IMG/VR virus record: IMGVR_UViG_3300024308_000016
Location: 186,001-250,000 of that record
Length of the DNA: 64,000 nt
Reading direction: 5' to 3' (one strand)
Below are positions 41,200 through 57,658 of this stretch, one piece after another; within the stretch, counting starts at the first letter, position 1; the number at the start of each line of letters is the position of its first letter. The translations under genes and the position numbers were made by a program. The notes beneath the pieces are model-generated. The model was not told the origin of the DNA. It searched no databases and worked only from the letters and a program-made list of their open reading frames with translations.

Positions 41200-43293
41200 C
41201 TATCGGCCGATAGCGGTTTCAGTGCCTCGCACAGCGCCTTCCAATACGTGCCCTGCTCCCAGAGTGACGTACTGCAAGAAACCGGTTGTGGCGCTGTTGT
41301 GGGTGGCGGCTGCCCAGAACGCGGGAGACGTCCATTTGCCGTAGTTGATAGCAGCCTTGGCCAAACGCAGACGCGCTGCGCTCATAGGGAAGATCTGCGA
41401 GTAGATGTCCTGGGACGCAAGTACTGCCAGGTAGTCGGACAAGATGTTGTCCTCATCGAGCGTCATGTCCACGCCGAAAATCTCGCCCCCGGACACAGGC
41501 ATATGCATCACACTGGACAGATCGACCACGGAGAACGACACCTCAAACGCCAGTGGGTTACCACGAGAGTCAAAGCCGATGTTGGCTCCAGCCCCAGCTG
41601 TGATGGTCAGCGACTCGATCATCCCCAGTCGGATCTGAGCGCGACCCTTATCGAAGATCTGGCACAGGAAGGGAGCCGTGTACGCCTGCTTGCCGATGGA
41701 GCGTGGGAGCGTCCCTGCCAAGATCATCGCTAGCGGGATGTACAGCTTCATCATGCGCTGCATGGGCGTGTTGTACGTCGCCATCAAGGTGAACGAGTAC
41801 GTGGTCCGGGGCAGCGACACCGAGGAGCTTTGCCAGTGCTTGGGGACATCCACATAACCGTCACCTAGGATACCCTGCACGAAGGATGCCATATCAAGGG
41901 TCACGCCGTTGATCAGGCCCGACGCTGCATCGCCCAGAGCACCCATCACATCCTTGACGGTCTCGCCAATGAAGTTGCCTTCAGCCAGCGCAAAGCGCGC
42001 AGAGCGAACAGTCGAGGATGCATTGTTGAGCTTTTGCTGCAGCTGCGATTCCACAGCAGAGTTGTTGAAGCTCGTCGCCTGTGGACCTGTGAAGTCCACA
42101 TTGAACGTTGCAAACTGAGACCCCATCCGGAACTCCGCATCGAAGTACTCGGCATACTGGTGCAGCCAGGACTTGTCTTGCTCCTTGCCCTCCGGGGAGT
42201 TGGTATCGATGCGCGGGTCGGTCTCACTAACGGCTGAGGAGTTGTCCTCCGCCCGAAACACGTTGGCCAACTTCAGCGTCTCATCGAGCAAATCCGCCAG
42301 CCGGTGCTTGCCCTGTTTGTTGGTGACCTTGGTGGAGTGAGTGCCGTCTCCAGACAGCTCACGCTTCAAGTATCCCACATAGTCAGTAGCTGTGCCGTTG
42401 TCAGCAGCGTTGTACTCCTGGGTGTGGATCTCGTTGGCCAAGCGTTGGGCGCGATTGGCGATGGAGTGGACGTCGAAGTAGTTCTGTTCGCCGAACACAT
42501 CGGGCATGATGCGATTCAATTGGGTCAGGTAGTCTTGGTCGATCGTAAACGGCCTGCCCAACTTTTGAGTGTCGTCCGCATTGGCGCCCAAGATAGCTGG
42601 AAAGATACCGATATTCACCGCCAGCGTGTTGGCCAGTGTGTTCACCGTGGACCAATACGCGAACATCAGCGGCTTCATGGTGTAGAACTTGCTAGTGCTT
42701 CGGTTGAAGAAGAACCCAGCCACCCGTCCAGCCAACACAGTGATCGCCACTGCTGGGAACGTCACTACCGTGATGAAGGTACCCAGCAGTTTACCTGCCG
42801 TATAAAAGGCGCTCGGCATACGGCCTGTGCGAGCAAACGTGGATTGACCTGGATCAAATGCTCGACTGAGGAAATTCACCAAGGAGTTGAACCTGGGGAC
42901 ACCGAAGCGCAAAAAGATCGTCTGCTTGGTGTCGTCCACTGCCTCGGAGTAGTAGTGACCCCAACCATAGTTGCCCGAGGAGTTGTAGATCGACAGCTCT
43001 GCACGGTCAGCCATGCGGCCTGGCACCGGGAAGTCGGCGTACGGTGTGTACTGCGGGGCGTTGTTGATGCCGATGTTTCCACCTAGACGCGAGTCGGTGA
43101 ACTTGCTCGACGCAGTGGACCAAAAGCGGTTGGTCTTGTCGACTTCATCTTCAAAGTCATCATTGGTCAGCATGAACGACGTGCGGACCCAATCGGAGTC
43201 CAGCAGGTCGTAGGGGTTTTCTCCGCCGATGGCGGTGTTGGTTTTTTGGATCGCCTTGCCAGAGCGGAAGGCGTCGCGAAGATTGGAAGCCAT
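41200..43293 (-). CDS. Virion structural (tail/baseplate hub) protein, phiKZ gp182-like; start MASNLR
   Basis: Follows the tape-measure gene; KFTDSRLGGNIGIN and LRFGVPRFNSL motifs. Confidence 0.7.
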   Translation of the reverse strand: MASNLRDAFRSGKAIQKTNTAIGGENPYDLLDSDWVRTSFMLTNDDFEDEVDKTNRFWSTASSKFTDSRLGGNIGINNAPQYTPYADFPVPGRMADRAELSIYNSSGNYGWGHYYSEAVDDTKQTIFLRFGVPRFNSLVNFLSRAFDPGQSTFARTGRMPSAFYTAGKLLGTFITVVTFPAVAITVLAGRVAGFFFNRSTSKFYTMKPLMFAYWSTVNTLANTLAVNIGIFPAILGANADDTQKLGRPFTIDQDYLTQLNRIMPDVFGEQNYFDVHSIANRAQRLANEIHTQEYNAADNGTATDYVGYLKRELSGDGTHSTKVTNKQGKHRLADLLDETLKLANVFRAEDNSSAVSETDPRIDTNSPEGKEQDKSWLHQYAEYFDAEFRMGSQFATFNVDFTGPQATSFNNSAVESQLQQKLNNASSTVRSARFALAEGNFIGETVKDVMGALGDAASGLINGVTLDMASFVQGILGDGYVDVPKHWQSSSVSLPRTTYSFTLMATYNTPMQRMMKLYIPLAMILAGTLPRSIGKQAYTAPFLCQIFDKGRAQIRLGMIESLTITAGAGANIGFDSRGNPLAFEVSFSVVDLSSVMHMPVSGGEIFGVDMTLDEDNILSDYLAVLASQDIYSQIFPMSAARLRLAKAAINYGKWTSPAFWAAATHNSATTGFLQYVTLGAGHVLEGAVRGTETAIGR

Positions 43294-43319
43294 AAAAATA
43301 GTTCTCGCAAAAGGTGACA

Positions 43320-43347
43320 GCAGTAGCTCCCTTGCGGGAGCTACTGC
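43320..43347 (-). terminator. Hairpin after the tape-measure gene
   Basis: GCAGTAGCTCCC-TTGC-GGGAGCTACTGC (GCAA loop on the minus strand). Confidence 0.6.
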
Positions 43348-43357
43348 GGTCGGTGGA

Positions 43358-46300
43358 TCAAAGCACTCGCCGGTTATCAAAGGATGAGGTCGACGCTTCC
43401 GCAAACTTCGGTGTCTTGTACACCGGAGCGACGGGTTGCGGGGCCTCGGGCTTGGCGCCTCCTTGTTCAACCATGACTTGTCCCAGTCCGGTCAGTGCCT
43501 GACTCATGCCCTGCAGTATCGGAACGATCTGCGTGACAAGCGTCTCACTGATGGTGGCTACGTACTTATTGGAGTCATTGCCGATTTGGACCAGCTCATC
43601 GATGCCTTGGCTATTTTGGCCCTTGGCGATGGCGGTCAGTGCGGGATCAGGTCTTGCCATGGAGGGGACAGTGATCCGACGCTCAGCTGCTGCCGAAGCT
43701 TTAGCTGGTGCGGCGCTCGCTGTACTCACCGTCCGCATAGCGGAGCTGGGTACATTGAACGACGCGGTCGTGGTAGCGGTAGGTGTCGATCGATCAGCGT
43801 CAGCCGCCACAGCCTTGCCGGTAGTGTTACCTACCTTGGGGCCTCCCATGCCCTTAGGGGCGTAGGGAATGTTGAACTGCTGTGCCTTGTTCTCGATCTT
43901 GTTTTCGATGCGGTCGTACATCTCCGAGGTGGTCAGAGGACGATTGTTCGCATAGAACAGTTTGGCGTTGATGGGGTTGGCCGCTGCCTTTTGGAAGAGG
44001 CTGGCTGCCGGTGTATCGGGAGAGGCACTGAAGAACTTCCTGGCTCCGCCCAGACCCAGGTAGTGGGCCATGTAGCCGTCAGTGAAGTCGGGGTTTGGAC
44101 GTACAGACTCCAAACCCTTCAGATTTTGCTTCAGATACTCCGCACCCATCAAGGTGTTGGCTCTTGGATCAGTGCGATCTTCGTTGCCCTTCAAGCCGTA
44201 CTTGGAGCCGGTCTTGCGCATGGTGTCGTTCCATGCAGCGGGGAAGAACTGGTTCAAGCCGACCGCATTGCCAGCTTTGGCAGCGGGGTTCATACTCGAC
44301 TCCATCGCGCTCATCAAGAGCATGTCGTTGGGATTGACGCCTGCTTCCTTGGCAGCGGAGGTGATGGTGCCTCGGATGCCTTGCTCTGCAGGTTTTCCAC
44401 CACCCACAGATTCGGAAGGACGGGTTTCTCCGTCTTCGGCAAGTTTGCCCTTGTCAGTGTCGATCTTAGCACTTGGCTTGTAGGCCACTTGCTGCGTGCC
44501 CGAGGAGAACTTGTCTGGAGCGCCAGTGGTGGCGATCGCAGCCGCTGTAGGCGCTTGAGCCTGAGCGGTCATGCTCTTTTCCTCGGTGACTCCGGTCTTG
44601 GCCTTGATGCCTTGGTCCGCCTGGCTTGCAGTCTCGCCTGGAACCTGGGGCATTTTCAGATCGTTGATCGGAGAAGCTCCCTTGACCGCTGGGTCAGTGA
44701 CAGTAGCACCGCCCTTGGCGTTGTACAGGTCACGAGCGAGCTTGGGGTTGCGGGTGCCGAGCTTGGAACCCTTGATAGAGCCTTGGCCTCCGCCTCCTCG
44801 TCCCAGCGACGACTGGATCGCAATGTCCGCATAACTCTTGTCGGTTTTGGCCAGTTTCTCCGAGCCTTGGTAGCCGGCTGCTTCGATGTGCCACGTCTCT
44901 CCGCCCACAGGGCGAGTGAAGCCGTACTTGCGAAGCAATCCCATCTGCTCGAGTTCTTCCAGTTGGACGCTGGAGACGTCAAGCGCCAGGCCATGCTCGT
45001 GCATGGAGTTGCCGGGCTTGGCTGCCTTGGCTGGGTTTTGTCGGTGAAGCGCTGCTTGTCTTTGATAGCTTCGGAAAGCCTCATTGACTTGCAAGCTTTT
45101 GCCAGTGGCCTCCCCATACTCCTGGGCCATAGACAAGAAGTGCTTGAGCAGGCGCGGTTGCATCCCTTCCAGGACGGCGTCCTTGCCCAACTTCACGTAC
45201 TTCATGCCGCCGGAGCCATCCGCCATTTGACCACCCGCCAGTGCAGGCACCTTGGTCATCCCGGTGGAGGAGTCCGAGCCATCGGCCTGGCCATTGGAGA
45301 TGATGGTGGAGTTTTGGGTCTTGGACTGGGGAGGATCCTCAGGAGTGGCCACATCGAAGGGCTTGGCACTCGGAGCTTTGTTGAGCTCTCCGACTTGCTT
45401 GGACTCCACCGCAGGGGTGTTGGGGATCGCCTCACTCTTGATCTGATCGCCAGCCGCCACGATGACTGCCTTGGCATTCTTCTTGTCAGCTCCCTTAGGA
45501 TCGATCTCCCCAGCTTTGATCGCCGCTTTGACGCTCTTTTGCTGCTCCAGTCCCAGCGTCTTGATCTTGGCGTTGACCAGATTGAACGCAGGCTGGACGT
45601 TCGTGTTCAGAGAGTTCAGTCCCTTGAACGGAGAAACCGTCACGTCGTAGGGGCCCGACTCGAACGCTGCCTTGGACAGGTATTCGAGCTTTTGTTCGGG
45701 CTTGAGCTTGTCGAGTTCATCGAGCTTGACCTTCATGTCCACCTGAGCCAAGATAGCCAGGTGGTGCAAGAATACGGGTTTGAATCGCTGGTCGATCCAC
45801 TCCGTCAGGTTCTGAACCATCTGCGACTCCTTGGGATCGATGGAGAAGATCTCCAAGATGTCCTTGGTGTCGATGGCACGCTCGTTGATGTAGGGCTGCT
45901 TGCCACGGTATCCGATACGGCCGTCCAGCAGGTACTTCTCCAGGCCCATGACCTGGCTGTTGTACATCTCGGTAGCGTCAGTGCCGTCCAGACCGTACTG
46001 GATCACGCGGATGCGTTGCCAATCGTCGAGTCGGTTGCGGGTGAGGTACTTGTACAGCTTGTAGCCGCCATAAGCGGTTCCAGCCACAGCAGCGGCGCCG
46101 AGCACGACCGGAGAAGTGAGAACAGCCGCCAGCGAAGTGGCTGCGGCTCCCAAAGCGCCGATGATAGCACCGCCGGAACCACCAGCTGCCAGACCTACGG
46201 TCATAGCTGCACGAGCTGCGAAGCCACCGAAGCGGGCAACAGAGGCTGCACCTGGCAGTCGGGCCAACAGACCACCACCTGCCTTAGCGGCACCCGCCAA

Positions 46301-49300
46301 AGGTGTGCCCACTGTCCGAAAAGCTGTCGGGATCTTGCTCAGACCGGAGCCGAGCAAGCTCGCGCCTCCCATCAAGCCGCGACCGAGCAGTCCAGCTCCG
46401 CCTTTGAGGCCGCGACCCAGCAAGGAACCCGCGCCCTTGAGCAGTCCGCCCTTTCCACCCAGACCAAGCAATCCTATCGCCCCACTCATGATAGAGCCAG
46501 CGGCTGATGCGATAGTACCCATCATGCCGGTAGCCATCTTAAAGATGGTACTGAGCATGTCTGAGCCTTCCATGTACTTGTTCTTCTCCAGCCCTGCTTC
46601 GGACTTTTGCTGGGCTTCGAGCTTGCGCTGCTCATTGGCTTGGCGCATGTCTTCGTTTTGTTGCATGCGGTCAGCAGCTCCGCCATCGCGCTGTCCATCA
46701 CCGTCTCGGTCGTTGAACTGGCCCGTAGCCTTGCGGTACGCCTTCATAGCGCGTTGCTTGGCTTTGTTGACCATGTTGCGCATGCCGGAGCCAGACTCTT
46801 GAGAAGTCTCCTCCTGAGCGGGGCCTTGCTGCTGATTGCCGGCTTGGTCCTTATTGCCGGAGAACATACCAGACAAGAAACCTGCACCCTTGGCCAAACT
46901 TCCACCCAGACCTCCGAGCAATCCTGCTCCACGACCGAGCAAGCCTCCCAGACGACCTCCGCGTTTAGCGCCCAGGCCTGCGACCCTGGAGCCAGCCTTA
47001 GAGGCCATAGAGCCGATACCGCCGATGGCGCCCGGAAGCATAGAGGCGACACCTCCGAGCAATCCACCCAAGTTGCCACCAGCGTACTTGTTCATGATAC
47101 GCTGGCCAGTCGGGATCTGGGGACCTAGATCCACGCCAGATGGGAACATGGGACCTACGAAGTCGTCCGTTCCAGGCTGAGGAGCCGAGCCAAACATCTT
47201 GGCCCAGTCTTTCATCTTCTTGATGGTGCTGGAGTTGGCAGCTCCCGTGGTCTTGTCCTTGAGGAAGTCCCCGATACGAGCGCCTTGACCCAAGATAGAG
47301 TCCACGATCTTGGAGTCTTTGCCCACCAAGCTGATGTCCCGGATCTGAGTGAGCAGCGAGCGGTTGGTCTTGTCGACCGAGTCGTCCGATACTTCCTCAG
47401 GTGTCGCCGCCTGCATGGGCTTGGCCCCTGTGCGGTTCAAGATAGAACGCACGCGTCGACCACCCTTGCCCATTGCCAGGAGATCCCGGATCTGTTCGAG
47501 CACTTCTGTGGGCTTTTGCCAGCAGGTGCAGTCTCCGCCGGCTTGGAGCTGGGGAAGAGCTTGCAGTGCCTTGGAGACAGACTCTCCGATAGATGCCGAC
47601 AGCTCTCCCATACGCTCCTTCGACGATGCCCACATTGCGGCCATCCCTTCAGCGGAGTTTTGCCACGCTTGTCCAGCCATGGCTTTACCGTCTTCGTACA
47701 TCTGGCCCGCGCCCTGCACTCCGTGCTGGTACATGCTCTTGGCTTTACCGCCGAAGGACTTGGCTCTATCGCGAGCGAAGTCATACGCCTTGGATGCGCC
47801 GCTCATGAGCATGCCTGCAGCTCCTCGGCCCCGAGTGAACGCCTCGCCGGCCTTCTTCTTGATCCAGTCCAGCGCTTGGCGGGTCAAGGTACGCACAGGC
47901 TTGCCGTCTGCAGTAAACAGGCCGTCGACCATGTCGTCGATCGTCAGAACCACCTTGCCGTGGTGATCGATCACGTTGCCGGAGATGCGCGACAGGTCCT
48001 CCAAGTTCTTGATGGGCTTTCCGGTGCTCTCGTCCTTGTAAGCACCGAGCTCCATGAGCTTGGCGCGCAACACCGGTGCGGGATTGCCCGGCATGTACAC
48101 GTCCTGGGGACCGTTGACCAAGTTGATAGCCATGCCCTTGGCCTTATCGAGCATCATCCGTGCGGTCTTGACGGTGGCGGGCACCTTTTGGAACAACACG
48201 TCAGAACCAAAATCCACAGCTCTGCGAGTAGCGTTGACCGCTGCCTCGTAGACGCTGGACATCAGATTCTTGGCAGGCTCCTTAGCTGCTCCAGCAGCCG
48301 ACTTGCCCATATCCCACCCAGGCATGATCACCTTGTCCTTGAGCCAAGATGCCGTATCGATGGTGGTGCCTGTGAGTTTGGCAGCACCAGCAGCGGCTGC
48401 GTTGACCACACCAGCGATCAGGTTACCCATCAGGCCTTGGCCCTTCAGACCAAACCCGCGGGAAGCCATAGAACCGCCTTCTTGACCGCCCTCGCCCCCA
48501 AAGCCCATGAAACCACCGCCCTTGGCTTGTTGGGCGGAGATCTTCTTGACTTGCTCATCGATACTCTTGAGGTATTGAACGCCTTCTGAACCCACACCAC
48601 TGTCGAACTTCTCACCCAGCGCCTTGATGGCGGCGAGCATGTGACCTTGGGCCGAGATCGGATCGATGGAGGTGCCCCCTGGTGCTGTCTCCTCTCCCAG
48701 ATTTCGGTTCACGTCCTGAGCCATAGGACCGAAGTGCGTGGACTTGCCCAATCCCGCAGCTGCTTTGTAGTTCCAGCTGTAGTTGTCAGTGTTCATGATC
48801 CCCTTCAGGCTAGCTGTGGGGTTCTTGGGTGCGTAGGAGCGGATGTTCTCCTTTTGGGTCTGGTCAGACGTCATCCGGCCGCCTTGGTCGATGAGCTTGT
48901 AGTACTCATCTTCCACGATCTCGTAGTTGCCGTCCTTGTCACGCTTCAAGAAGCCCGCTTCCACCAGTCCTTCAGCATTGCCGTCAGCGATGGCTTGCTG
49001 GATAACGCCTCGGTGGTCCTTCACAGAGCTTCTGAGCTCCGAAGACCGGGACGTGAGCGAATACTTGCGGGTCAGCGCCTCCAGGGAGTCGCCGCTGTAG
49101 TTGGTCTGCAAGATCTTCCTGACCGTTTCCTGGGCTGAAGGGCTCAGGTTGCGGAACTCCACGGTGTCCATCATCCGGTCACCGTCATAGTCGAAGTTGC
49201 GCCTGCGGCTCAACTTGCCCAGATAGTCCTTTACTTCGTCTCGGTCCGCGTCTGGAACAGTGGCACCCTTGGTGAAGTCGTCGTAGGTCTCATTCAGGCG

Positions 49301-50869
49301 ATCCTTGTAACTGGACTCAGATGCTGCCTTCTTGATACCCATCAAGATGTCCGAGGACAGCTCGCGTTGGGTCTTGAACTTGCCGGTGTTGGGATCGTAC
49401 ACAGTCAGTGCCGTGGAGGTGTCTCCAGTGCGCAGCACGGTGATCTCTCGCAAGATGCGGGCCAAGTAGCCTGGGATCACATCGACCTGCGCGCGAGCCA
49501 CTCTCTTGGCGGTGTACAGGGCATCTTCCCCTTCTCCCCCGATGCCAGAGTTCTTGATAGTCATATCCGGCGTTTGATCACCGAAGATATCCATCAGGCC
49601 TTCGAGCATCTCTCGGATAAGACCAGAGGGACCTCCCGCGTAGCCGAAGTCCTGGAACTTGTCAGAGCGTTTGATCCGATCGATCAGACCGCCGGGGTTG
49701 TGCCCATAGCGGCCAGCCAGCATGGAGGCGCGCATGATGTTGGGGTTCTTCTCGGCAAGGGCTTTCAAGCGCTTGGAGACGTTCTTGCTCACCCACTCAC
49801 CAGCGGCAGCCCCCACGCCAGAGCCCACTGTGCGCCACCCCGAGTGCTTTTCCCCGGTGATCTCCGCCATGTCCCGGGCCATTTCGTTTTCGGAGATGAT
49901 GTTCTCCAGCATGTCATCGACCAAGGAGATGTTGTCCTTGAAGTCGTCCATCTGCTCTTTGATCTTGGCTCGGATCTTCTTGCTGGCGTTGGCGATTCGG
50001 TCGGTGGTACCAAACAGGCTGTCCTGGATCGCGCCGAACGCCTTGTTCTTGGCGATGTTGGAGAAACGCTCGGTTTCCTTGATCTTGGCAGCATCCGGCA
50101 GTCCGGTATTCTTCAAGATCCCAGCACCCGTGGTCTCAGCGACCTTGCGGTACTCGTTGAAGCTCTTGACCAGCGAGGCCATAGCGAAGTAGCTCCGGTA
50201 CTGCAGCTCAAGCGACTTCTTTTGGAAGTTCATGTTGAACGTCTGCTGGTAATCCCGGATGCTGTTGACACCGACGGCGATCTGCTGCTGGACCTTAAAC
50301 GAAGTGTTGAAGCGCTTGGTGTCGATCTTGTCGCTCAAGATCTTGCGGGCCTCATCCTCGACGCGATCTTCCTCGGTCTGAGCCATCATGCGCCCAAACG
50401 TCTCACCCAGCATACGCTCCACGCCCTGGTCCACCGCATCGGTGTTGTCCCAGTCGGTCTTGCGCGAGCCGCTCAGGGAGTCCGCCAGTGCCTTGGTCGT
50501 TTGCTTCAGACGCGTGGCCGAATCAGGTACGAGCTTGTCGATCTTTCTCATGATGGAAGCCAGCTGAGGCTTGACTTCCGAGATAGATTGATCGTATAGA
50601 CGCGAGGCATCTGACGTGATCTGATCCGTCGCCTCCCATGCTTTGCCGATGCCCTCGGGCAATGCGTCACGCGCTATCTGCGTATAGGTGGAGGGATCAG
50701 TGAACTTGTTACGCATGCTGGTCTTGACGCCTTCGAGGACGTGGTCGACTGGCTTGCGGTCGCGCTTGGGGCGCTCATCAGGGAAGTCTCCCCCGGAATA
50801 ATCAAAGTCAAGATCCCGATCAAATTCGAAATCCCCGTAATCATTACGGTTATCATCACGAGTCGCCAT
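43358..50869 (-). CDS. Tape-measure / structural peptidoglycan hydrolase (phiKZ gp181-like) with S74-like, M15-peptidase and SLT domains
   Basis: About 2,503 aa; long Gly/Ala helical repeats; SLT motifs AMESSMNP, GLNQF, YMAHYLG; M15 motifs FRS..RQ, SMHEHGLALD, ETWHIE. Confidence 0.85.
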   Translation of the reverse strand: MATRDDNRNDYGDFEFDRDLDFDYSGGDFPDERPKRDRKPVDHVLEGVKTSMRNKFTDPSTYTQIARDALPEGIGKAWEATDQITSDASRLYDQSISEVKPQLASIMRKIDKLVPDSATRLKQTTKALADSLSGSRKTDWDNTDAVDQGVERMLGETFGRMMAQTEEDRVEDEARKILSDKIDTKRFNTSFKVQQQIAVGVNSIRDYQQTFNMNFQKKSLELQYRSYFAMASLVKSFNEYRKVAETTGAGILKNTGLPDAAKIKETERFSNIAKNKAFGAIQDSLFGTTDRIANASKKIRAKIKEQMDDFKDNISLVDDMLENIISENEMARDMAEITGEKHSGWRTVGSGVGAAAGEWVSKNVSKRLKALAEKNPNIMRASMLAGRYGHNPGGLIDRIKRSDKFQDFGYAGGPSGLIREMLEGLMDIFGDQTPDMTIKNSGIGGEGEDALYTAKRVARAQVDVIPGYLARILREITVLRTGDTSTALTVYDPNTGKFKTQRELSSDILMGIKKAASESSYKDRLNETYDDFTKGATVPDADRDEVKDYLGKLSRRRNFDYDGDRMMDTVEFRNLSPSAQETVRKILQTNYSGDSLEALTRKYSLTSRSSELRSSVKDHRGVIQQAIADGNAEGLVEAGFLKRDKDGNYEIVEDEYYKLIDQGGRMTSDQTQKENIRSYAPKNPTASLKGIMNTDNYSWNYKAAAGLGKSTHFGPMAQDVNRNLGEETAPGGTSIDPISAQGHMLAAIKALGEKFDSGVGSEGVQYLKSIDEQVKKISAQQAKGGGFMGFGGEGGQEGGSMASRGFGLKGQGLMGNLIAGVVNAAAAGAAKLTGTTIDTASWLKDKVIMPGWDMGKSAAGAAKEPAKNLMSSVYEAAVNATRRAVDFGSDVLFQKVPATVKTARMMLDKAKGMAINLVNGPQDVYMPGNPAPVLRAKLMELGAYKDESTGKPIKNLEDLSRISGNVIDHHGKVVLTIDDMVDGLFTADGKPVRTLTRQALDWIKKKAGEAFTRGRGAAGMLMSGASKAYDFARDRAKSFGGKAKSMYQHGVQGAGQMYEDGKAMAGQAWQNSAEGMAAMWASSKERMGELSASIGESVSKALQALPQLQAGGDCTCWQKPTEVLEQIRDLLAMGKGGRRVRSILNRTGAKPMQAATPEEVSDDSVDKTNRSLLTQIRDISLVGKDSKIVDSILGQGARIGDFLKDKTTGAANSSTIKKMKDWAKMFGSAPQPGTDDFVGPMFPSGVDLGPQIPTGQRIMNKYAGGNLGGLLGGVASMLPGAIGGIGSMASKAGSRVAGLGAKRGGRLGGLLGRGAGLLGGLGGSLAKGAGFLSGMFSGNKDQAGNQQQGPAQEETSQESGSGMRNMVNKAKQRAMKAYRKATGQFNDRDGDGQRDGGAADRMQQNEDMRQANEQRKLEAQQKSEAGLEKNKYMEGSDMLSTIFKMATGMMGTIASAAGSIMSGAIGLLGLGGKGGLLKGAGSLLGRGLKGGAGLLGRGLMGGASLLGSGLSKIPTAFRTVGTPLAGAAKAGGGLLARLPGAASVARFGGFAARAAMTVGLAAGGSGGAIIGALGAAATSLAAVLTSPVVLGAAAVAGTAYGGYKLYKYLTRNRLDDWQRIRVIQYGLDGTDATEMYNSQVMGLEKYLLDGRIGYRGKQPYINERAIDTKDILEIFSIDPKESQMVQNLTEWIDQRFKPVFLHHLAILAQVDMKVKLDELDKLKPEQKLEYLSKAAFESGPYDVTVSPFKGLNSLNTNVQPAFNLVNAKIKTLGLEQQKSVKAAIKAGEIDPKGADKKNAKAVIVAAGDQIKSEAIPNTPAVESKQVGELNKAPSAKPFDVATPEDPPQSKTQNSTIISNGQADGSDSSTGMTKVPALAGGQMADGSGGMKYVKLGKDAVLEGMQPRLLKHFLSMAQEYGEATGKSLQVNEAFRSYQRQAALHRQNPAKAAKPGNSMHEHGLALDVSSVQLEELEQMGLLRKYGFTRPVGGETWHIEAAGYQGSEKLAKTDKSYADIAIQSSLGRGGGGQGSIKGSKLGTRNPKLARDLYNAKGGATVTDPAVKGASPINDLKMPQVPGETASQADQGIKAKTGVTEEKSMTAQAQAPTAAAIATTGAPDKFSSGTQQVAYKPSAKIDTDKGKLAEDGETRPSESVGGGKPAEQGIRGTITSAAKEAGVNPNDMLLMSAMESSMNPAAKAGNAVGLNQFFPAAWNDTMRKTGSKYGLKGNEDRTDPRANTLMGAEYLKQNLKGLESVRPNPDFTDGYMAHYLGLGGARKFFSASPDTPAASLFQKAAANPINAKLFYANNRPLTTSEMYDRIENKIENKAQQFNIPYAPKGMGGPKVGNTTGKAVAADADRSTPTATTTASFNVPSSAMRTVSTASAAPAKASAAAERRITVPSMARPDPALTAIAKGQNSQGIDELVQIGNDSNKYVATISETLVTQIVPILQGMSQALTGLGQVMVEQGGAKPEAPQPVAPVYKTPKFAEASTSSFDNRRVL

Positions 50870-50925
50870 AGTGCGAACCCTTTCTTTTATTATGCGGACC
50901 AAAAAACACTCAAAGGATCACAGCC

Positions 50926-52946
50926 ATGGCAAAAGACATTGACCCACTGAAGATAGAGCTGCTCATCCCCATGAAGACGGACTTGCAGGGTGTCAAGCCC
51001 GTGCTGGTCATGGACATCATGAGCGGCATGAGCAAGAACTTCCACCCTGAGGGCTTGTTCTCGGTGGAGATCTTCGGTAAAGTCGGAGAAACTACACGCT
51101 CGGCCACCTTCGCCTATATCAACTTGAATATCCCGGTGTTTCACCCGCTGCTGTTCAAGGTGATCTGCGATTTGAAGGAGCTGTACCAAGACATCATGGC
51201 CGGTAAGGCCTACGCAGTGTTCGATGAGGAAAAGAAGGACTTCTTCAAGAGCAACATTGCAGAAGGTGAAACCGGCTTTGCGTTCTTTTTGAAGCACTTC
51301 CCCAAGCTGCAGTTCGAAGAGCGTAAATCCATCACCCGGGCTGAGTACATCCGTCTGGTGGAGATGTACCGCGATAACCCCTTCATCGAGCAACTGGTCA
51401 TCTTGCCCGCCGGTGTGCGGGACTATGTGGTCGAAGAAGACGGCAAGCCTTCGGAAGACGAGATCAACGGTATGTACCGCTCCATCATGGCAGTGGCTGG
51501 CTCCATGGAGAACGTGCGCGCTGATGTGAACCCTGAGTTCATCGATGCGTCCAGATACAACCTGCAAGTCAAGCTGCTGGAGATCTACCGATACCTGATC
51601 GGCCTGATCTTGGGCAAGCACAAGATGGTCCAAGGCGCGTTCTTGAGCCGCAAGGTCTCCAACACCACGCGAAACGTGATCACCTCTTATATCCCGAACG
51701 TGCAAGAGTTCGGCGATGCCAGAAGCGTGCGTGCTGACCAGACGGTGATCGGCCTGTACCAGTTCACCCGAGACATCATGCCGCTGGCGGTGCATGCCAT
51801 TGTGGGCAAGTACCTGCCCAAGGTTTTCACGGGTCCCAATACCCCGGCTCAGCTGGTCAATCCAAAAACCCTGCACAAGGAAATGGTGACCGTCAACCCC
51901 CGGGAGTACAAGAAGTGGATGACCTACGAAGGCATCGAGAAGATGGCCGATCGATTCTCCGAAGAGTCGATGCGCCATTACCCGATCATGATCGAAGGCT
52001 ACTACATGGGCCTCGTGTACAAGGGCAATGACGGCACGTTCAAGTTCATCCAGGACATCGACGAGATCCCGGAGTCCCGCTCCAAAGATAGCGTCACTCC
52101 CATCACCATGGCGGAGTTCCTGTACATGTGCCTGTACGAGGAAGCCCTGGACGCCTGGGGTTATACCACTCGGTATCCTATCTCCGGCTATGGATCGACC
52201 TACCCGGGTGGGGTCGCTCTGAGAACTACCGTGCGATCGGAAGTGCGCACTGAGCTGGACGACTACTGGCAACCGATGCCTCACCAAGCGGTGAGCTTTC
52301 CGTTGCCGGGTGCGCAGTTCTTCAACTCCATGAGCCCAGCTGTCCGCCAAATTGGCCGGCTGGGGGCTGATATAAATACAGCTTTCACTCCCCTAAATCG
52401 CATATACAGCTATCCCAGACGAGGGATGTGAGTGACTAAGGGTGTAAGCGTATATGTCCTTCTGTCTAGTAATAGACAGTCGAAACTTCTTTAATTGCTG
52501 GAAACCCCTGAGAGCCGACCACACCACTGCGAGCGGTAACGTAAAGCGACGGTTTTAAGAAATGGGCGGATTGGGCAATCAGCAGCCAAGCCTCTTACTG
52601 AGAGGAAGGTCCAACGATCATCGGGTAGCTCCGAGTAAAGCCCCAAGCGGGGAAGAAATGGGAAGGGTCCTACCAGGTCATGCTGGGGATCTTGATATGA
52701 TCTGCTCCTCATGGAAACATGAGGCGGGTGTCTGTAGCACACCGGGACTGCGTAGCGAGCAGTCTGGACAATAGGTACGACGGGGACCAATGTTCTCACT
52801 ATTGTGTACTGACCCAGGAAGCCAAGCGAGAAGTCAAGCGTATGCTCGCTAGCAGGGATTATTACATGAACCTGGACGGCACCATGGCGTTCAGCCAAAA
52901 CAACGACTACATCTCTTTGGCGCTCAAGTATCTTACTGCGCGCTGA
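50926..52946 (+). CDS. Virion RNA polymerase beta'-like catalytic subunit (phiKZ gp180-like), spliced: join(50926..52371,52776..52946), 538 aa
   Basis: FHPEGLFSVEIFG, ILPAGVRD and TTRYPI motifs; exon joining restores the RLGAD-YDGD catalytic motif in frame. Confidence 0.9.
52372..52775 (+). ncRNA. Group I self-splicing intron, 404 nt, no homing endonuclease ORF
   Basis: 5' exon ends in U and intron ends in G; P AATTGCTGGAAA, Q AATCAGCAG, R TCCAACGATCA, S TGATATGATC; IGS CGTATATGTC pairs with both exons. Confidence 0.92.
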
Positions 52947-52963
52947 TCTTTGAGGATTTCACA

Positions 52964-55900
52964 ATGGGCTTTCAGCAATACAAGGATTGGTATCGGGATC
53001 ATGGCACACGCAATGCGCTGAGCCTGATGAACGTCGATCCCACGCCGGTCAAGAACCTGCCCCAGGGCTCGACCCTGCACTACCTGGGCTCCGATGATGC
53101 CCCACTGCCTGATCTGTCTGATCCCCTGTTTGCTGGGTACTCTAATAAGATCGAGCTGCACTCCATCACGGAGTACAACGGAGCCACCGAGCCCCACGGC
53201 TCCAAGCTAGCGGTACAGGTGGTCAAACAAACCACGGACTTTGCGTCTCGCAGCAAGCTGTTCCACTACTTGAAGACCCTGAACCTGTCCACAGTCTCCA
53301 ACAGCCAGCTGGTGGTGGTGAGCTACGGCTTCTTGGATTTGATGTACCGCTATCCGGCAGTATCGACTTCCAAGTACTATCAGTTTCGCAACAAACTGCA
53401 GACGTTTGTCTCCACGGTGAACTTCCTGAACCGGGACAAGCCCAGGAACAACTTCATTGTGCTGACGGTGCCATCCGAGCTGGTAGGCCGCAACACGCTG
53501 GACAACCGGGCGCTGGGCCAACCCAAGCAAGTCGCCAGCATCTTTGACACCGAGGAGAAGGTGGTGTTGCGCGAGATGTGGCTGTGGTGTAATCCCGATA
53601 CCCGGGACCATTCGGTCTTCGCTGACATGAGCGAGACTGATATGCGGCACTTGAACTTGATGTTCAAGACTTACACAGGTGAATACACCACGGTCTCGTT
53701 TGGCTATCTGTACAGCTGGATGAAGGGCAACCCCAACTACACCACAGTCTCTGCTGTGATGCAGGTGAGCTTCATCGAGCTGCAAAAGTACTGGCTCAAG
53801 TACTTGATGGTGCTGCAAACTATCAACGCCAATGGTGCATCGCTGGCCGAGCAGGAGAAAGCCGCAGCCGAGGCGATGGTCAAGGCAGAGACCGCCACTG
53901 ATCCCGACAAGGAGGCTCCTGAGGGCGACCAGCCCCAGGAAGAGCGATTTCCCGAAGTACCGACTGAAGGACACTCTGGACTGGGAACAAGTAGCTCAGG
54001 CGACGGGCGTGACACCGCAACAAGCAAGGCTACTGCTGGCGACACTATTGAAGCCGAGATCGATATTACCCAGCAGCTCAAAGAACTCGACGCGGATATA
54101 GCCGCGCTCGATGCACTGGACAAGCGCAAGTTCGACAACAAGTTCGTGGTCAAGAAAGACGCCGATGGTGAAGAGCTCATCGACGTCAAGGACGTGACAC
54201 CGGAAGTATATACCTCCGACATCCCGGAGACTGCTGAAGCCATCGCGGCGAAGATCTTCACCGCCAAGACCGCCAAGCAAGCTCTCCTGGACAAGATCGA
54301 CGCAGCCGCTGATGAAGGCCGCATCTCCGTGTCCGACTACCGCAAGCTCAGCGAGCAAGCCAGGAAGTCCGACCAAGCGCAAGACCCCTTCGGCTCCGAC
54401 AAGACTATTGCCGAGGCTATGAAGATCGAGCCCGGGGAGCTGGAGATCACCCAGCAAGAAGCAGCACTGAATGTGCCGCCCACTGTGCTCGATCCGTCGA
54501 TGGCCGCAGCTCCCCTGTCGGTGATGGATCGCAAGTACAACACCTCTATCATCTACAAGGATGTGCTGAGGTCGGTGCAGGCTATCCAAAAGGCTGGCAT
54601 CATCGTACGTCGCCATGAGGTGGAGACCAAGTACTCGGAAATGGGTACGTTCGATGTGCACACCATCGAGCTCAAACCCGTCAACGGCAACCCCTCCATC
54701 ATCCGGGCACGCATACCGCGCGTCGACGAAGAAGGCATCTTCGTGGTGCGGGGTGTGCGCTACTTGGCGCGTAGCCAGATGGTGGACAAGCCCATCCGCC
54801 GCATCGGTGTCAACCGTGTGGGCCTGACCAGCTACTACGGCAAGAGCTTCGTAGACCGGGCAACCAAGAAAGCCGATAGCTACTTGGAGACCATCATCCG
54901 ACGCCTGAACCGTGGCACCATCGAGCCAGACCAAGACATCCGGGACGTCTCTCCGGGTGATGTGTTCGACAACTACTTCGAAGCGCCCTACATCTACAAC
55001 GGTCTGGCGGCAAAGTTCCGTTCGTTCAGAGCTGGTCCGTACTTGCTGAACATGAACCACAAGGACCGGGAAAAGGCAACGACTCCCGAGATCCTCGCCA
55101 AGCTGGAAGTCAAAGGACGACGCCTGATCGGTCAGGGCCCTGGCTCTCGTCCGCTGGTGGTGGACATGGACAACCAGTTTTACCTGATCGGCCCTGACGG
55201 GGAGACTCCCGTAGGAGACATCTTTGACATCATGAAGATGGACCGCCACAATGCACCTGTGGACTTTGCGGAAGTGAAGGTCTTCTCCAAGGGGATTCCG
55301 GTCGGTGTGTTCATCGGCTACAACCTGGGATTTCGGGCACTGGTCAAGTACCTGGGAGCTCGCCACCGTCTGGTGGAAGGACGCCAGCAAAAGAAGATGG
55401 GACCCTACGAGTACGCCGTGCAGTTCAAGGACGTGGCCTACATCTTTGACCGCAGGGACAAGGCTGCATCATTGGTGCTCGCTGGTTTCCGGGCGTTTGA
55501 GAAGGACACCAAGGCGTACGACGCCGTCGAGTTCGACAACAAGGCCGTCTATACCCGACTGATGGAGTCCCGGGGTCTGACGAGTATCTATCTCAAGGAG
55601 ATGGAGAACTTGGTGGACATGTTCGTTGACCCGATCACCGAGGACTTGCTCAAGGAGCTCAACGAGCCACAGACCTTTATGGGGCTGCTGGTGCGCTCGT
55701 GCGAGTTGCTCGACACCTACCACCATCCGGCGTCCCAGGACATGAACAACCAGCGTGTGCGGGGCTATGAGCGCTTCGCTGGCTTCCTGTACAAGGAGAT
55801 GGCCAACTCGGTAAGGGCATTCAAGTCCAAGAACACGACAGGACGCGCTAAGGTGGACATGAGTCCGTTTGCAGTGTGGTCGCTTGTCACGCGTGACAAC

Positions 55901-57658
55901 TCCGTCAAGCAAGCCGAGGACATCAATCCCATCCAGGCGCTGAAAGGCTCGGAAGCCATCACCTATGTGGGAGAAGGTGGCCGCTCCAAGGAGTCGATGA
56001 ACAAGGCATCCCGCGCTCTGCACACCTCCAACCTGGGCGTGGTGTCGGTCGATGCTTCCGTAGACTCTTCGGACGTGGGTATCAACATCTTTACCTCCGC
56101 CAACCCTGGCTTCAACTCCGTGCGTGGAATGAGCAAGAAGGGTCGTGAGATGGGACCCGCCAACCTCCTGGGCACCAGCGCGATGCTGGCACCCTTTGCG
56201 ATCAATGACGATCAAACAGGTCCGCACTACTGGAGACGGTATTGTGTATCTCCCTCAATTGCGAGAACCCCCTGAGAGCTCCACTACCACTGCTAGCCGC
56301 GAGGCGAAGCGAAGGTTCTAACAAAGCTGGAGATTGGGAAACCCGCAGCCAAGCCTCTCTAGTCAGAGGAAGGTTCAACGACTATGGCAGTTTGTCAGCC
56401 ATAGGGCCGAAGTGGCCCGAAACAGGGAGCATCTCTTAATCTAGAGATGAAGATATAGTCTCGACATCTGGGGAAAACCCAGAGCTGCTCTTATACTAGA
56501 GCGGGGCAAGCGTAACGAACTTGCCTGAAGGTATCGCCAAAACGTGTCGCATTTATCTCCATCCAGCAGGCCCACACCGTGGCCACCACTGGCTACCACG
56601 CACCCGTGGTGCGTACTGGCTACGAGTCCGTGATCGGACAGCGTACTGGTGAGATGTTCGCTTCGGCTGCTCGGATGGACGGCAAGGTGATCTCGGTATC
56701 GGACTCCGGCATCTTGGTGGAGTACGCAGACGGTGAACAAAAGGGCTACACCTTGGGCACGATGTACGGACGTGCGGAAGGCTCCACCTATCCACACAAC
56801 CTCATCACTGAGATGAAGCCCGGTCAGAAGTTCAAGAAAGGCGAGTACATCTCGTACAACACCAACTTCTTTGAACCCGACCCGATCTTGCCAGGCTCCG
56901 TGGTCTACAAGGGTTCCATGCTTACGCGTGTGGCTCTGATCGAATCCTCCAACACCCATGAGGACTCCTCGACTATCAGTGAAGAACTGTCCAAGTCGAT
57001 GACCACCACCACCGCCAAGGTCAAGAAGTACGCCGTGAACTTCCGGCAAAACCTGCTCAACATGGTCAAGATCGGCCAGCAGGTCAACCCTGAAGACATC
57101 ATCATGACCATCGAAGATGAGATCACTGCGATGGACGACAGCTTCGGAGATGCGTCGATGGAGATCCTGGCCGCCCGTGCCAAGAACTCTCCGACGTCCG
57201 GCTACCGTGGCCGAGTCTCTGACATCGATGTGATCTACCACGGCGACAAATCCGATATGTCCGCATCTTTGAAAGCCTTGGCTGATCGCTCCGATCGCCG
57301 AAGAGCCGACAAGGCCAAGGCCACGGGTCGACCTGCTGTGACCGGAGCTGTTGACTCCGACTACTCGCACGACGGTGCACCGCTGATGCTCAACAAAGCG
57401 ATCATCATCGTCTACATCACCGTCTCTGAAGGAGCGGGCGTTGGTGACAAGTTGGTATTCTCCAACCAGCTCAAGAGCGTGATCGGTGAGGTCATGCCCT
57501 ACAAGCTCACCACCAAGTCTGGCCTTCCCGTGCATGCCAAGTTCGGTGCCAAGAGCTTCGCTGCCCGTATCGTGAACTCTATGATCTCGATCGGATTGCG
57601 GGGCGCAGTCCTCGACCGGCTGACTGATGTCGCCGTCGAAGCTTACGAAGGAAAGTAA
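52964..57658 (+). CDS. Virion RNA polymerase beta-like subunit (phiKZ gp178-like), spliced: join(52964..56212,56537..57658), 1456 aa
   Basis: QRVRGYERF, TYVGEGGRS, SVDSSDVG and GVGDKLVFSNQLKSVI motifs; exon joining gives NDD-PKRVAFISIQ. Confidence 0.9.
56213..56536 (+). ncRNA. Group I self-splicing intron, 324 nt, no homing endonuclease ORF
   Basis: P1 GAU|C-AAACA-GGUC with U-G pair; P AATTGCGAGAA, Q AACCCGCAG, R GTTCAACGACTA, S AAGATATAGTCT; terminal G. Confidence 0.94.

What the first reader, a model, noticed from the sequence alone, without database searches (positions are those of the whole stretch)
48600..48870. Peptidase-S74-like autocleaving chaperone domain inside the tape-measure/lytic protein
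Seen: TSDQTQKENI...LKGIMNTDNYSWNYK...HFGPMAQDV...IDPISAQGHMLAAIKAL at about residues 668-757 of the 2,503-aa protein. Known: this matches the intramolecular chaperone (S74/ICA) pattern SDxxxKxNI...Y.Y...G..AQ...L.AIKEL. That domain trimerises and self-cleaves through a Ser-Lys dyad, and is normally C-terminal on tailspikes and fibres (internal in MYRF). The dyad is intact here (Ser668 at 48866-48868, Lys673). Inference: the protein may self-process into an N-terminal ~667-aa part and a C-terminal part carrying the TM-like and muralytic domains, coupling trimerisation to tail assembly or ejection. I am not aware of this architecture being described for gp181-like proteins.
Basis: partly seen in the sequence, partly recalled or inferred. 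Interest (0 to 1): 0.8.

Follow-up and report, generated by a model that had tools for sequence, protein, structure and literature searches.

The report
Self-cleaving trimerisation domain inside jumbo-phage tail protein
The giant tail protein (tape-measure/cell-wall-lysin, phiKZ gp181-like) of this uncultured jumbo phage really does carry, in its middle, the small self-cutting "intramolecular chaperone" domain normally found at the end of phage tail fibres. The same arrangement recurs with an untouched catalytic Ser-Lys pair in about 185 related metagenomic proteins but in none of the cultured phages tested, so the protein most likely trims itself into a 75-kDa and a 192-kDa piece.

Summary
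Window 50869..43358 (-) encodes a 2,503-aa protein. Residues 668-722 match Pfam PF13884 (Peptidase_S74) at 35 bits, above the cut-off of 22. Ser668 (48866-48868) and Lys673 (48851-48853) form the canonical SDxxxK motif.

An AlphaFold2 model of residues 570-860 finds only intramolecular-chaperone structures as top PDB matches: MyRF ICA 7dc3, phi29 gp12 3gud and endoNF 3gw6. The gene is the phiKZ gp181 equivalent. It matches PHROG 3201, has VanY and SLT lysin domains at the C-terminal end, and lies between virion-RNA-polymerase genes and a gp182-like gene.

The domain sits at the same place in 185 metagenomic homologues, which share only 22-48% identity with the window in the flanking N-terminal part, apart from one close relative at 85%. 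All 185 keep SDxxxK. Seven cultured relatives lack the domain: RSF1, RTH11, FLC9, 201phi2-1, a phiKZ-like phage and 2050HW by profile search, SPN3US by BLASTP only. Three tblastn searches of 50,697 phage records found no other cultured example. No paper I could search describes it.

Best explanation: a MYRF-like, trimerisation-gated self-cleavage splits the protein into an acidic 75-kDa N-terminal part and a basic 192-kDa part. The larger part carries the glycine-rich hydrophobic segments and both lysins. Cleavage itself is inferred, not shown. This is a new variant of a known kind, of moderate interest.

The parts
43358..50869 (-). Gene for the 2,503-aa (266.5 kDa) gp181-like virion tail lysin / tape-measure candidate
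   Evidence: ORF and translation. PHROG 3201 E 3.5e-188 over residues 13-860. tblastn hits gp181-like genes of 292 phage records at 25-29% identity. M1 is invariant among homologues.
48869..50869 (-). Predicted N-terminal fragment, residues 1-667 (74.8 kDa, pI 5.6). Almost entirely alpha-helical, with long helices in 40-340 and a confidently modelled helical domain in 350-665.
   Evidence: AF2 model with mean pLDDT 71.6, above 90 for about 370-440 and 500-660. No PDB fold or sequence match. Mass and pI.
48866..48871 (-). Predicted scissile bond Thr667|Ser668. Ser668 is the nucleophile (codon 48868..48866).
   Evidence: Ser aligns with Ser1 of the released phi29 gp12 chaperone 3gud and with position 587 of the MyRF S587A crystal construct 7dc3. 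Ser is present in 164 of 164 aligned homologues, and in an upstream SDxxxK in the other 21. The model's pLDDT drops below 50 exactly here, at model residues 98-100.
48851..48853 (-). Lys673, the general base of the Ser-Lys dyad (SDQTQK)
   Evidence: Lys aligns with the Lys of 8jov, 7dc3 and 3gud. It is invariant in alignment A1 and present in 170 of 172 aligned homologues.
48524..48868 (-). Peptidase_S74 / intramolecular chaperone autocleavage domain, residues 668 to about 782. It comprises the SDxxxK motif, helix 684-692, strands 697-700 and 711-714, the GPMAQ motif at 714-718, AP.G at 729-732, and a long C-terminal helix at 737-782.
   Evidence: Pfam PF13884. Conserved columns. AF2 secondary structure. 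Foldseek top hits 7dc3, 3gud and 3gw6.
48365..48436 (-). First hydrophobic Gly/Ala-rich segment (residues 812-835), after a Gly-rich linker (about 783-811)
   Evidence: Kyte-Doolittle 19-residue window of 1.2 or more, and Gly fraction up to 0.34.
47003..47071 (-). Second hydrophobic glycine-zipper-like segment (residues 1267-1289), inside a Gly-rich stretch at about 1231-1360
46439..46525 (-). Third hydrophobic glycine-zipper-like segment (residues 1449-1477)
46067..46210 (-). Fourth and longest hydrophobic segment (residues 1554-1601, KD maximum 1.81)
44888..45163 (-). VanY-type (M15) peptidoglycan peptidase domain, residues 1903-1994, with SMHEHGLALD and ETWH metal-ligand motifs
   Evidence: Pfam PF02557 E 4.3e-7, 30.2 bits against a cut-off of 25. 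PHROG 13118 endolysin. Motifs.
44054..44365 (-). SLT lytic transglycosylase domain, residues 2169-2272, with MESS, GLNQ and AHYLG motifs
   Evidence: Pfam PF01464 E 3.6e-10. PHROG 4067. 32% identity to the SLT region of SPN3US gp239. Motifs.

Best explanation
The window's gp181-like tail protein carries a working Peptidase_S74 intramolecular-chaperone/autocleavage (ICA) domain at residues 668 to about 782. Three copies of the protein are brought into register when the long C-terminal helices of the domain (737-782) form a trimeric bundle. Only in the trimer is the Ser668-Lys673 dyad assembled. It then cuts the chain once, between Thr667 and Ser668.

This gives an acidic, all-helical 75-kDa N-terminal fragment and a basic 192-kDa C-terminal fragment. 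The C-terminal fragment starts with the ICA domain. It continues with four hydrophobic glycine-zipper-like segments, a VanY-type peptidase and an SLT transglycosylase.

The topology is that of eukaryotic MYRF (soluble N-terminal part, then ICA, then hydrophobic segments), not that of tail fibres, where the chaperone is the C-terminal end and is discarded. I infer that both fragments stay in the tail as a trimer in the tube lumen or hub. I also infer that the cut uncouples the two halves, so that the C-terminal lysin and membrane-active part can be expelled at infection.

Shown: domain identity, dyad, fold class, position, conservation, and absence from cultured relatives. Inferred: trimerisation, cleavage, and the fate and role of the fragments.
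For: PF13884 scores above Pfam's gathering threshold at residues 668-722. A profile of 70 homologous segments hits solved ICDs 8jov, 7dc3 and 3gud with Ser and Lys aligned. In the AF2 model, the domain core (about 680-750) has pLDDT 87-96 and the following long helix about 68-89. The only Foldseek PDB hits with probability above 0.5 are MyRF ICA 7dc3 (E 8e-4, TM 0.46-0.49 per target), phi29 gp12 ICD 3gud and endoNF ICD 3gw6.

The domain lies at the same place (median start 673) in 185 proteins with a median length of 2,439 aa. All 185 keep SDxxxK: 164 in the alignment and 21 with an insertion after the motif. The flanking N-terminal part of the 93 homologues aligned with the window is only 19-48% identical to it, apart from one close relative at 85%. 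W699, Y701, GPMAQ, G725 and AP.G are also nearly invariant.

229 cluster representatives at 50% identity match the segment profile at E<=1e-30, and the best 150 are almost all 2,000-3,600-aa proteins matched around residues 555-960. All hydrophobic segments and both lysin domains lie C-terminal of the site.

Family knowledge from the MyRF ICA structure paper (PMC8326128): S587/K592 are equivalent to endoNF S911/K916, both are indispensable, cleavage happens only in the trimer, and the C-terminal helix drives trimerisation. Syntenic relatives are virion or tail proteins: 201phi2-1 gp276 by mass spectrometry, and SPN3US gp239, called the 'tail tape measure protein'.
Against: No experiment or proteomic data exist for any S74-bearing member, because none is from a cultured phage in the collection searched. 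The structure tool models monomers only, so trimer formation and dyad geometry were not tested. Foldseek TM-scores are modest (0.43-0.49 per target), partly because the model includes flanks.

The segment just upstream of Ser668 is a helical domain with a beta-hairpin, not a triple beta-helix or fibre. The classical 'chaperone for a trimeric beta-stalk' role therefore has no obvious client. Many relatives, including all cultured ones tested, do without the domain, so it is not essential to the family's core function.
Confidence: 0.7

Rival explanations
1. The domain is a real S74 homologue but works only as a trimerisation or register module. The chain stays in one piece.
For: Trimerisation by the C-terminal helix is separable from cleavage in MyRF. 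Tape-measure-like proteins need to oligomerise in the tube (general knowledge). No cleavage data exist.
Against: Ser and Lys have no known role other than catalysis, yet SDxxxK is kept in 185 of 185 homologues while the surrounding positions (667, 670-672, 674) vary freely. Several homologues even duplicate the motif.
Confidence: 0.12
2. Classical fibre-type behaviour: cleavage occurs and everything C-terminal of Ser668 is released and left out of the virion. Only the 75-kDa N-terminal part would then be structural.
For: In endosialidases, T5 pb1 and phi29 gp12 the released C-terminal chaperone is not part of the mature particle (family knowledge; PMC8326128 introduction).
Against: The C-terminal 1,836 residues hold the parts that define the family as a virion lysin: the SLT domain shared with SPN3US gp239 and with phiKZ gp181, a structural peptidoglycan hydrolase (PMC5380687). 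Discarding 72% of the protein, including glycine-zipper segments and two lysins, would defeat the conserved architecture.
Confidence: 0.08
3. A recently inserted, functionless fibre module, or a chance or composition-driven Pfam hit.
For: Cultured gp181-like proteins lack it, and low-complexity linker occupies the same place in them.
Against: The Pfam score is above the curated threshold and there is independent structural agreement. The domain is at the same position in two deep groups of the family tree, with about 20 nearly invariant columns across 185 proteins. That pattern is long-term purifying selection, not a recent passenger.
Confidence: 0.02

Closest known systems
Phage intramolecular chaperone / Peptidase S74 domains (endosialidase endoNF 3gw6, phi29/GA-1 gp12 3gud, T5 L-shaped fibre pb1, tail fibre 8jov)
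   Same: Same Pfam family, same SDxxxK Ser-Lys dyad, same fold class with a long C-terminal helix. The nearest sequence relatives among cultured phages are C-terminal ICDs on proteins of about 400 aa in roughly 60-kb phages such as Parlo, PEp14, CF418P1 and POI1126, at 32-41% identity.
   Different: Those domains form the C-terminal end of a fibre or spike, follow a trimeric beta-structure and are discarded after cleavage. Here the domain is internal (residues 668-782 of 2,503), follows a helical domain, and is followed by 1,700 residues that include the protein's enzymatic and hydrophobic parts.
MYRF / MrfA ICA domain (eukaryotic membrane-bound transcription factor; PDB 7dc3)
   Same: Best structural match. 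The topology is the same: a soluble N-terminal part, an internal ICA domain, then hydrophobic segments, with trimerisation-gated cleavage separating the two halves (PMC8326128; PMC3742443).
   Different: No homology outside the ICA domain: there is no Ndt80-type DNA-binding domain and no beta-helical stalk. The context is a phage tail protein, and the hydrophobic segments are glycine-zipper-like rather than a single transmembrane helix.
phiKZ gp181 / 201phi2-1 gp276 / SPN3US gp239 (chimallivirus giant tail lysin, 'cell-puncturing device' or tape-measure protein)
   Same: Homologous N-terminal 640 aa (PHROG 3201; tree), C-terminal SLT, similar size, and the same gene neighbourhood between virion RNA-polymerase genes and gp182.
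   Different: The cultured members have no S74 domain and no detectable remnant of one. Six were tested with Pfam and a family profile; SPN3US gp239 showed no match to the domain by BLASTP. Their alignment shows a variable low-complexity linker at that place.
Processed tape-measure proteins (lambda gpH to H*, T5 Pb2 to Pb2*)
   Same: Long helical tail-lumen proteins that are proteolytically processed. Pb2 also has muralytic activity (PMC5380687 table). The processing itself is from my own knowledge.
   Different: Their cleavage is not known to be made by a built-in S74 domain. There is no sequence relation.

Membership tests
Peptidase_S74 / intramolecular chaperone autocleavage (ICA) domain | Sequence match to PF13884 above the curated threshold | tested here: met
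   35.0 bits against a gathering score of 22, E 1.7e-8, residues 668-722, profile positions 1-51 of 58
Peptidase_S74 / intramolecular chaperone autocleavage (ICA) domain | Ser-Lys catalytic dyad in an S-x4-K arrangement at the start of the domain | tested here: met
   SDQTQK at 668-673. It aligns to the dyad of 8jov, 7dc3 and 3gud. SDxxxK is present in 185 of 185 homologues.
Peptidase_S74 / intramolecular chaperone autocleavage (ICA) domain | ICD fold: short helices and strands, then a long C-terminal helix able to form a triple coiled coil | tested here: met
   The AF2 model has helix 684-692, strands 697-700 and 711-714, helix 717-724, and a long helix at 737-782. Foldseek top hits are 7dc3, 3gud and 3gw6, with TM 0.43-0.49 per target for the first two.
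Peptidase_S74 / intramolecular chaperone autocleavage (ICA) domain | Homotrimerisation | not testable with these tools
   Only monomer prediction is available.
Peptidase_S74 / intramolecular chaperone autocleavage (ICA) domain | Autoproteolysis at the conserved Ser | not testable with these tools
   Needs expression of wild type against S668A/K673A, or virion proteomics. Supported only by invariance of the dyad.
Phage tail-fibre/tailspike type ICD (architecture) | Domain is the C-terminal end of the protein and follows a trimeric beta-helix or fibre | tested here: not met
   The domain ends about 1,720 residues before the C-terminus. The upstream residues 570-665 are modelled as helices plus one beta-hairpin at pLDDT above 90.
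phiKZ gp181-like giant tail lysin / tape-measure candidate | Homology of the N-terminal region to the family | tested here: met
   PHROG 3201 E 3.5e-188. tblastn hits gp181-like genes in RSF1, 201phi2-1 and phiKZ-like phages.
phiKZ gp181-like giant tail lysin / tape-measure candidate | Conserved neighbourhood: divergent virion RNAP beta'/beta genes upstream, gp182-like gene downstream | tested here: met
   PHROG 2986 and 3148 RNAP subunits at 50926-57658 (+), and PHROG 3181 at 41200-43470 (-). The layout is the same in six isolates and in SPN3US.
phiKZ gp181-like giant tail lysin / tape-measure candidate | C-terminal peptidoglycan hydrolase domain | tested here: met
   SLT at 2169-2254, plus VanY at 1903-1974. 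Catalytic motifs are present.
phiKZ gp181-like giant tail lysin / tape-measure candidate | Location in the tail and a length-measuring role | not testable with these tools
   Known only for relatives: 201phi2-1 gp276 is a virion protein by MS, and SPN3US gp239 is assigned to the tail and called tape measure.

The most novel reading that the evidence does not exclude
A phage counterpart of the MYRF switch. Trimerisation-gated self-cleavage would turn one giant tail protein into two separately acting ejected proteins. One would be a membrane-inserting, wall-digesting C-terminal trimer that builds the conduit. The other would be a free acidic 75-kDa N-terminal trimer delivered into the cell with the virion RNA polymerase, whose genes flank it, with a role in the first steps of infection. 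If so, the internal ICA-plus-membrane-segment architecture that eukaryotes use in MYRF already exists in phages, and could be the kind of gene from which MYRF's ICA-transmembrane module was taken.
Probability: 0.12. Interest if true: 0.8.

Novelty: new variant of a known kind. Interest (0 to 1): 0.5.

Why it matters
S74 chaperone domains are textbook C-terminal, throw-away folding aids of tail fibres. MYRF was until now the notable case of an internal one that separates two functional halves. This finding shows the same internal layout in the largest tail protein of a broad, uncultured branch of phiKZ-like jumbo phages, with perfect conservation of the catalytic pair.

It gives a concrete, cheap test (wild type against S668A/K673A fragments) for how these 250-kDa proteins are trimerised and processed. 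That matters because nothing structural is known for their N-terminal halves: there is no PDB match. It also provides a natural comparison set, since close relatives with and without the domain exist. Finally, it warns annotators that a PF13884 hit here does not mean 'tail fibre'.

Tried and rejected
1. Near-identical DNA in 50,697 phage records: none. The window is from an uncultured phage. An identical-length member of its 90% protein cluster sits on a 272-kb metagenomic contig.

2. I looked for the domain in cultured gp181-like proteins. A Pfam scan of residues 551-950 of six isolates found no PF13884. A family HMM run with filters off on the full proteins gave nothing better than E 0.07, and never at the right place. 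The same search on residues 601-950 of all 52 S74-less homologues found no remnant (best E 0.035). Short look-alikes in the MAFFT alignment (DINVK in RTH11, GPM in the phiKZ-like protein) are therefore treated as chance.

3. tblastn of S74 segments from three branches (window, P0068, P0026) against all phage records found only small fibre-type proteins of roughly 60-kb phages.

4. I tested whether the domain was gained once. The tree of the N-terminal 640 aa needs 6 changes (at least 4 on well-supported branches) and is unrooted, so one old gain with several losses cannot be told from other histories.

5. The fold of the N-terminal 667 aa is all-helical, with no PDB match by sequence or structure. 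It gave no functional lead.

6. Nine literature searches for gp181, tape measure, S74 or jumbo-phage combinations found no description of this architecture. The jumbo-phage survey PMC7824862 mentions S74 only for its 'group 2' (T4-like) phages. PMC13037316 mentions an unrelated 1,410-aa S74 protein. The phiKZ proteome paper PMC3323674 is not held.
Full report
**What is there.** The finding lies in a single long ORF on the minus strand (43358..50902). From the ATG at 50869 it encodes 2,503 aa. That start is supported by an invariant M1 in an alignment of 94 homologues. Ser668 is codon 48868..48866 and Lys673 is 48853..48851. Residues 668-757 correspond to 48599-48868, so the coordinates are correct.

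**Is it a real S74 domain?**
- Pfam finds four families in the protein. SLT hits 2169-2254 (E 3.6e-10). Peptidase_S74 (PF13884) hits 668-722 at 35.0 bits, against a gathering score of 22, E 1.7e-8. VanY hits 1903-1974 (30.2 bits against 25). DUF5715 (1922-1973) is a sub-threshold hit under VanY.
- A profile built from 70 homologous segments (alignment A1) hits three solved intramolecular chaperone domains in the PDB. These are tail fibre 8jov, MyRF ICA 7dc3 and phi29 gp12 3gud. The family's SDxxxK lines up with their dyad, and 3gud begins exactly at that Ser, the cleavage product.
- An AlphaFold2 model of residues 570-860 has mean pLDDT 74.6. The domain core (about 680-750) is at 87-96 and the following long helix at about 68-89. 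Its secondary structure is helix 684-692, strands 697-700 and 711-714, helix 717-724, and a long helix at 737-782.
- Foldseek against the PDB returns only ICDs with probability above 0.5. These are 7dc3 (E 8e-4, TM 0.46-0.49 per target), 3gud and 3gw6. The next hits are noise.
- The model's confidence collapses exactly at residues 667-669, as expected for a linker that becomes ordered only in the trimer.

**What the host protein is.** PHROG 3201 matches residues 13-860 with E 3.5e-188. tblastn finds the gp181-like genes of 292 phage records at 25-29% identity, including RSF1, 201phi2-1 and phiKZ-like phages. The neighbourhood is the conserved one. A divergent gp180-like and a gp178-like virion RNA-polymerase gene lie upstream, and a gp182-like gene lies downstream. 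Six isolates and SPN3US have the same layout.

Evidence on the relatives is as follows.
- 201phi2-1 gp276 is a virion protein by mass spectrometry.
- The syntenic SPN3US gp239 (259 kDa) is assigned to the tail and called the tape-measure protein (PMC10052503; homology of the C-terminal part).
- phiKZ gp181 is listed in a review table as a needle-like cell-puncturing device in the baseplate and a putative trimer (PMC5380687).

There is no near DNA match in 50,697 phage records. An identical-length member (P0129) of the window protein's 90% cluster lies on a 272-kb metagenomic contig. The window is therefore an uncultured phiKZ-like jumbo phage.

**Architecture around the site.**
- The predicted N-terminal fragment (1-667) is 74.8 kDa with pI 5.6. 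It is almost entirely helical, with long helices up to 67 residues and a confident helical domain at 350-665. It has no PDB relative by sequence or fold.
- The predicted C-terminal fragment (668-2503) is 191.7 kDa with pI 9.5. It holds the ICA domain and a Gly-rich linker. It also holds four hydrophobic Gly/Ala-rich, glycine-zipper-like segments at 812-835, 1267-1289, 1449-1477 and 1554-1601.
- It also holds the VanY domain with SMHEHGLALD and ETWH, and the SLT domain with MESS, GLNQ and AHYLG.
- The layout is therefore soluble part, then ICA, then hydrophobic segments, then enzymes. This is the layout of MYRF, not of a tail fibre.

**Relatives elsewhere.**
- A word-indexed search returned 120 homologues of 1,638-3,480 aa, all but a handful from metagenomes. 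The listed longest contigs range from about 6 to 322 kb, and about twenty are 170-322 kb.
- An iterated HMM search finds the domain in 74 of them at about residues 655-870.
- An exhaustive profile search of 1.84 billion cluster representatives finds 229 at E<=1e-30. The best 150 are almost all 2,000-3,600-aa proteins matched around residues 555-960.
- Over the pooled set, 185 proteins carry the domain, with median start 673 and median length 2,439 aa.
- Ser is present in 164 of 164 aligned rows and Lys in 170 of 172. The 21 rows with a gap at the Ser column all have an SDxxxK 25-70 residues upstream, separated from the rest of the domain by an insertion.
- W699, Y701, GPMAQ 714-718, G725, A729-P730, G732, D736 and G742 are also kept in about 93-100% of rows. 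Positions next to the dyad vary freely.
- The flanking N-terminal part of the 93 homologues aligned with the window is only 19-48% identical to it, apart from one close relative at 85%. This is strong purifying selection on the catalytic pair.

**Cultured relatives lack it.**
- Pfam finds no PF13884 in residues 551-950 of the gp181-like proteins of RSF1, RTH11, FLC9, 201phi2-1, PhiPizzaParty (Phikzvirus) and 2050HW.
- The family HMM finds nothing significant in the full proteins or in any of the 52 S74-less homologues.
- In the alignment, the conserved block just upstream is shared by all. The S74-less proteins have a variable low-complexity linker where the domain would be.
- tblastn with S74 segments from three branches finds only C-terminal ICDs on proteins of about 400 aa in roughly 60-kb phages such as Parlo, PEp14 and CF418P1.
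- On a FastTree of the N-terminal 640 aa, the domain is strongly clustered: 0 of 500 label shuffles reach as few changes. It still needs 6 changes, at least 4 on well-supported branches. It occurs in two deep groups, and all isolates fall in S74-less groups.
- The identical position and the shared subfamily motifs argue for one origin followed by losses. The tree is unrooted, however, and gain cannot be told from loss.

**Mechanism.** The following comes from the family's established biochemistry as summarised in the MyRF ICA structure paper (PMC8326128). MyRF S587/K592 are equivalent to endoNF S911/K916. Both residues are indispensable. Cleavage is activated only in the trimer. The C-terminal helix drives trimerisation.

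On that basis I infer that three chains are brought into register by helix 737-782. The Ser668-Lys673 dyad then cuts Thr667|Ser668 once, and the protein is split into the 75-kDa and 192-kDa parts. The C-terminal part contains what makes relatives virion lysins. I therefore consider it more likely that both parts stay in the tail than that the C-terminal part is discarded as in fibres.

Domain identity, the dyad, conservation, position and distribution are shown. Trimerisation, cleavage and the fate of the fragments are inferred.

**Novelty.** Nine full-text searches found no description of an S74 domain in gp181-like or tape-measure proteins. The comparative survey of jumbo phages mentions S74 only for its group 2, T4-like phages (PMC7824862).

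The architecture is nevertheless abundant in metagenomic protein sets, and many members already carry automatic PF13884 labels. It is therefore a new variant of a known kind, not a new kind. Interest is moderate: a clear, cheap experiment could establish a MYRF-like self-processing step in the largest tail protein of a large uncultured jumbo-phage branch.

Noticed in passing
window 52436-52724 (+) and 56203-56484 (+): Two group I introns (Rfam RF00028, 58.3 and 65.2 bits against a gathering score of 50). The first follows directly on the stop of the gp180-like virion RNAP beta' ORF (50926-52431), which covers only positions 2-496 of the 539-position PHROG profile. The second lies between the two pieces of the gp178-like RNAP beta gene: 52964-56275 covers profile positions 3-1051 and 56579-57658 covers 1065-1422. 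Both virion-RNAP genes next to the gp181-like gene therefore look intron-split.
   Followed up: partly
homologues P0035 (682, 722, 771), P0082 (687, 703), P0037 (727, 745), P0025 (672, 726), P0027 (672, 702); 21 others such as P0034 and P0043: Some S74-bearing gp181-like proteins carry two or three tandem copies of the SDxxxK cleavage motif a few tens of residues apart. Twenty-one have an insertion of about 25-70 aa between the motif and the rest of the domain. These could be alternative or multiple cleavage sites, or a split domain. This is unexplained.
   Followed up: partly
L008 (Serratia phage Parlo) 5056-6312; L007 (Achromobacter phage CF418P1) 5218-6405: The closest S74 domains among cultured phages (32-41% identity) are at the C-terminal end of proteins of about 400 aa in roughly 60-kb phages (Parlo, PEp14, SopranoGao, LASTA, POI1126, PBC5, Atu_ph08, Skulduggery). 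These proteins are encoded near a giant virion protein, which is DarB-like in Parlo.
   Followed up: no
window 44888-45163 (-): A VanY-type (M15) peptidase domain sits upstream of the SLT domain. It is present in many but not all metagenomic homologues. It is not listed for phiKZ gp181 in the review table, which names only a glycosidase. This phage's tail protein would therefore attack both the peptide and the glycan part of the wall.
   Followed up: no
RefSeq and PHROG annotation of gp181-like genes: PHROG 3201 and many RefSeq records call gp181-like proteins 'tail fiber protein'. Other records call the same gene tail lysozyme, transglycosylase, cell-puncturing device or tape measure. The 'tail fiber' label is probably propagated annotation and is not supported by anything seen here.
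   Followed up: no
window 32733-34220 (+): A UvsX-like recombinase ORF (PHROG 97, E 8.4e-22), seen while scanning the neighbours.
   Followed up: no
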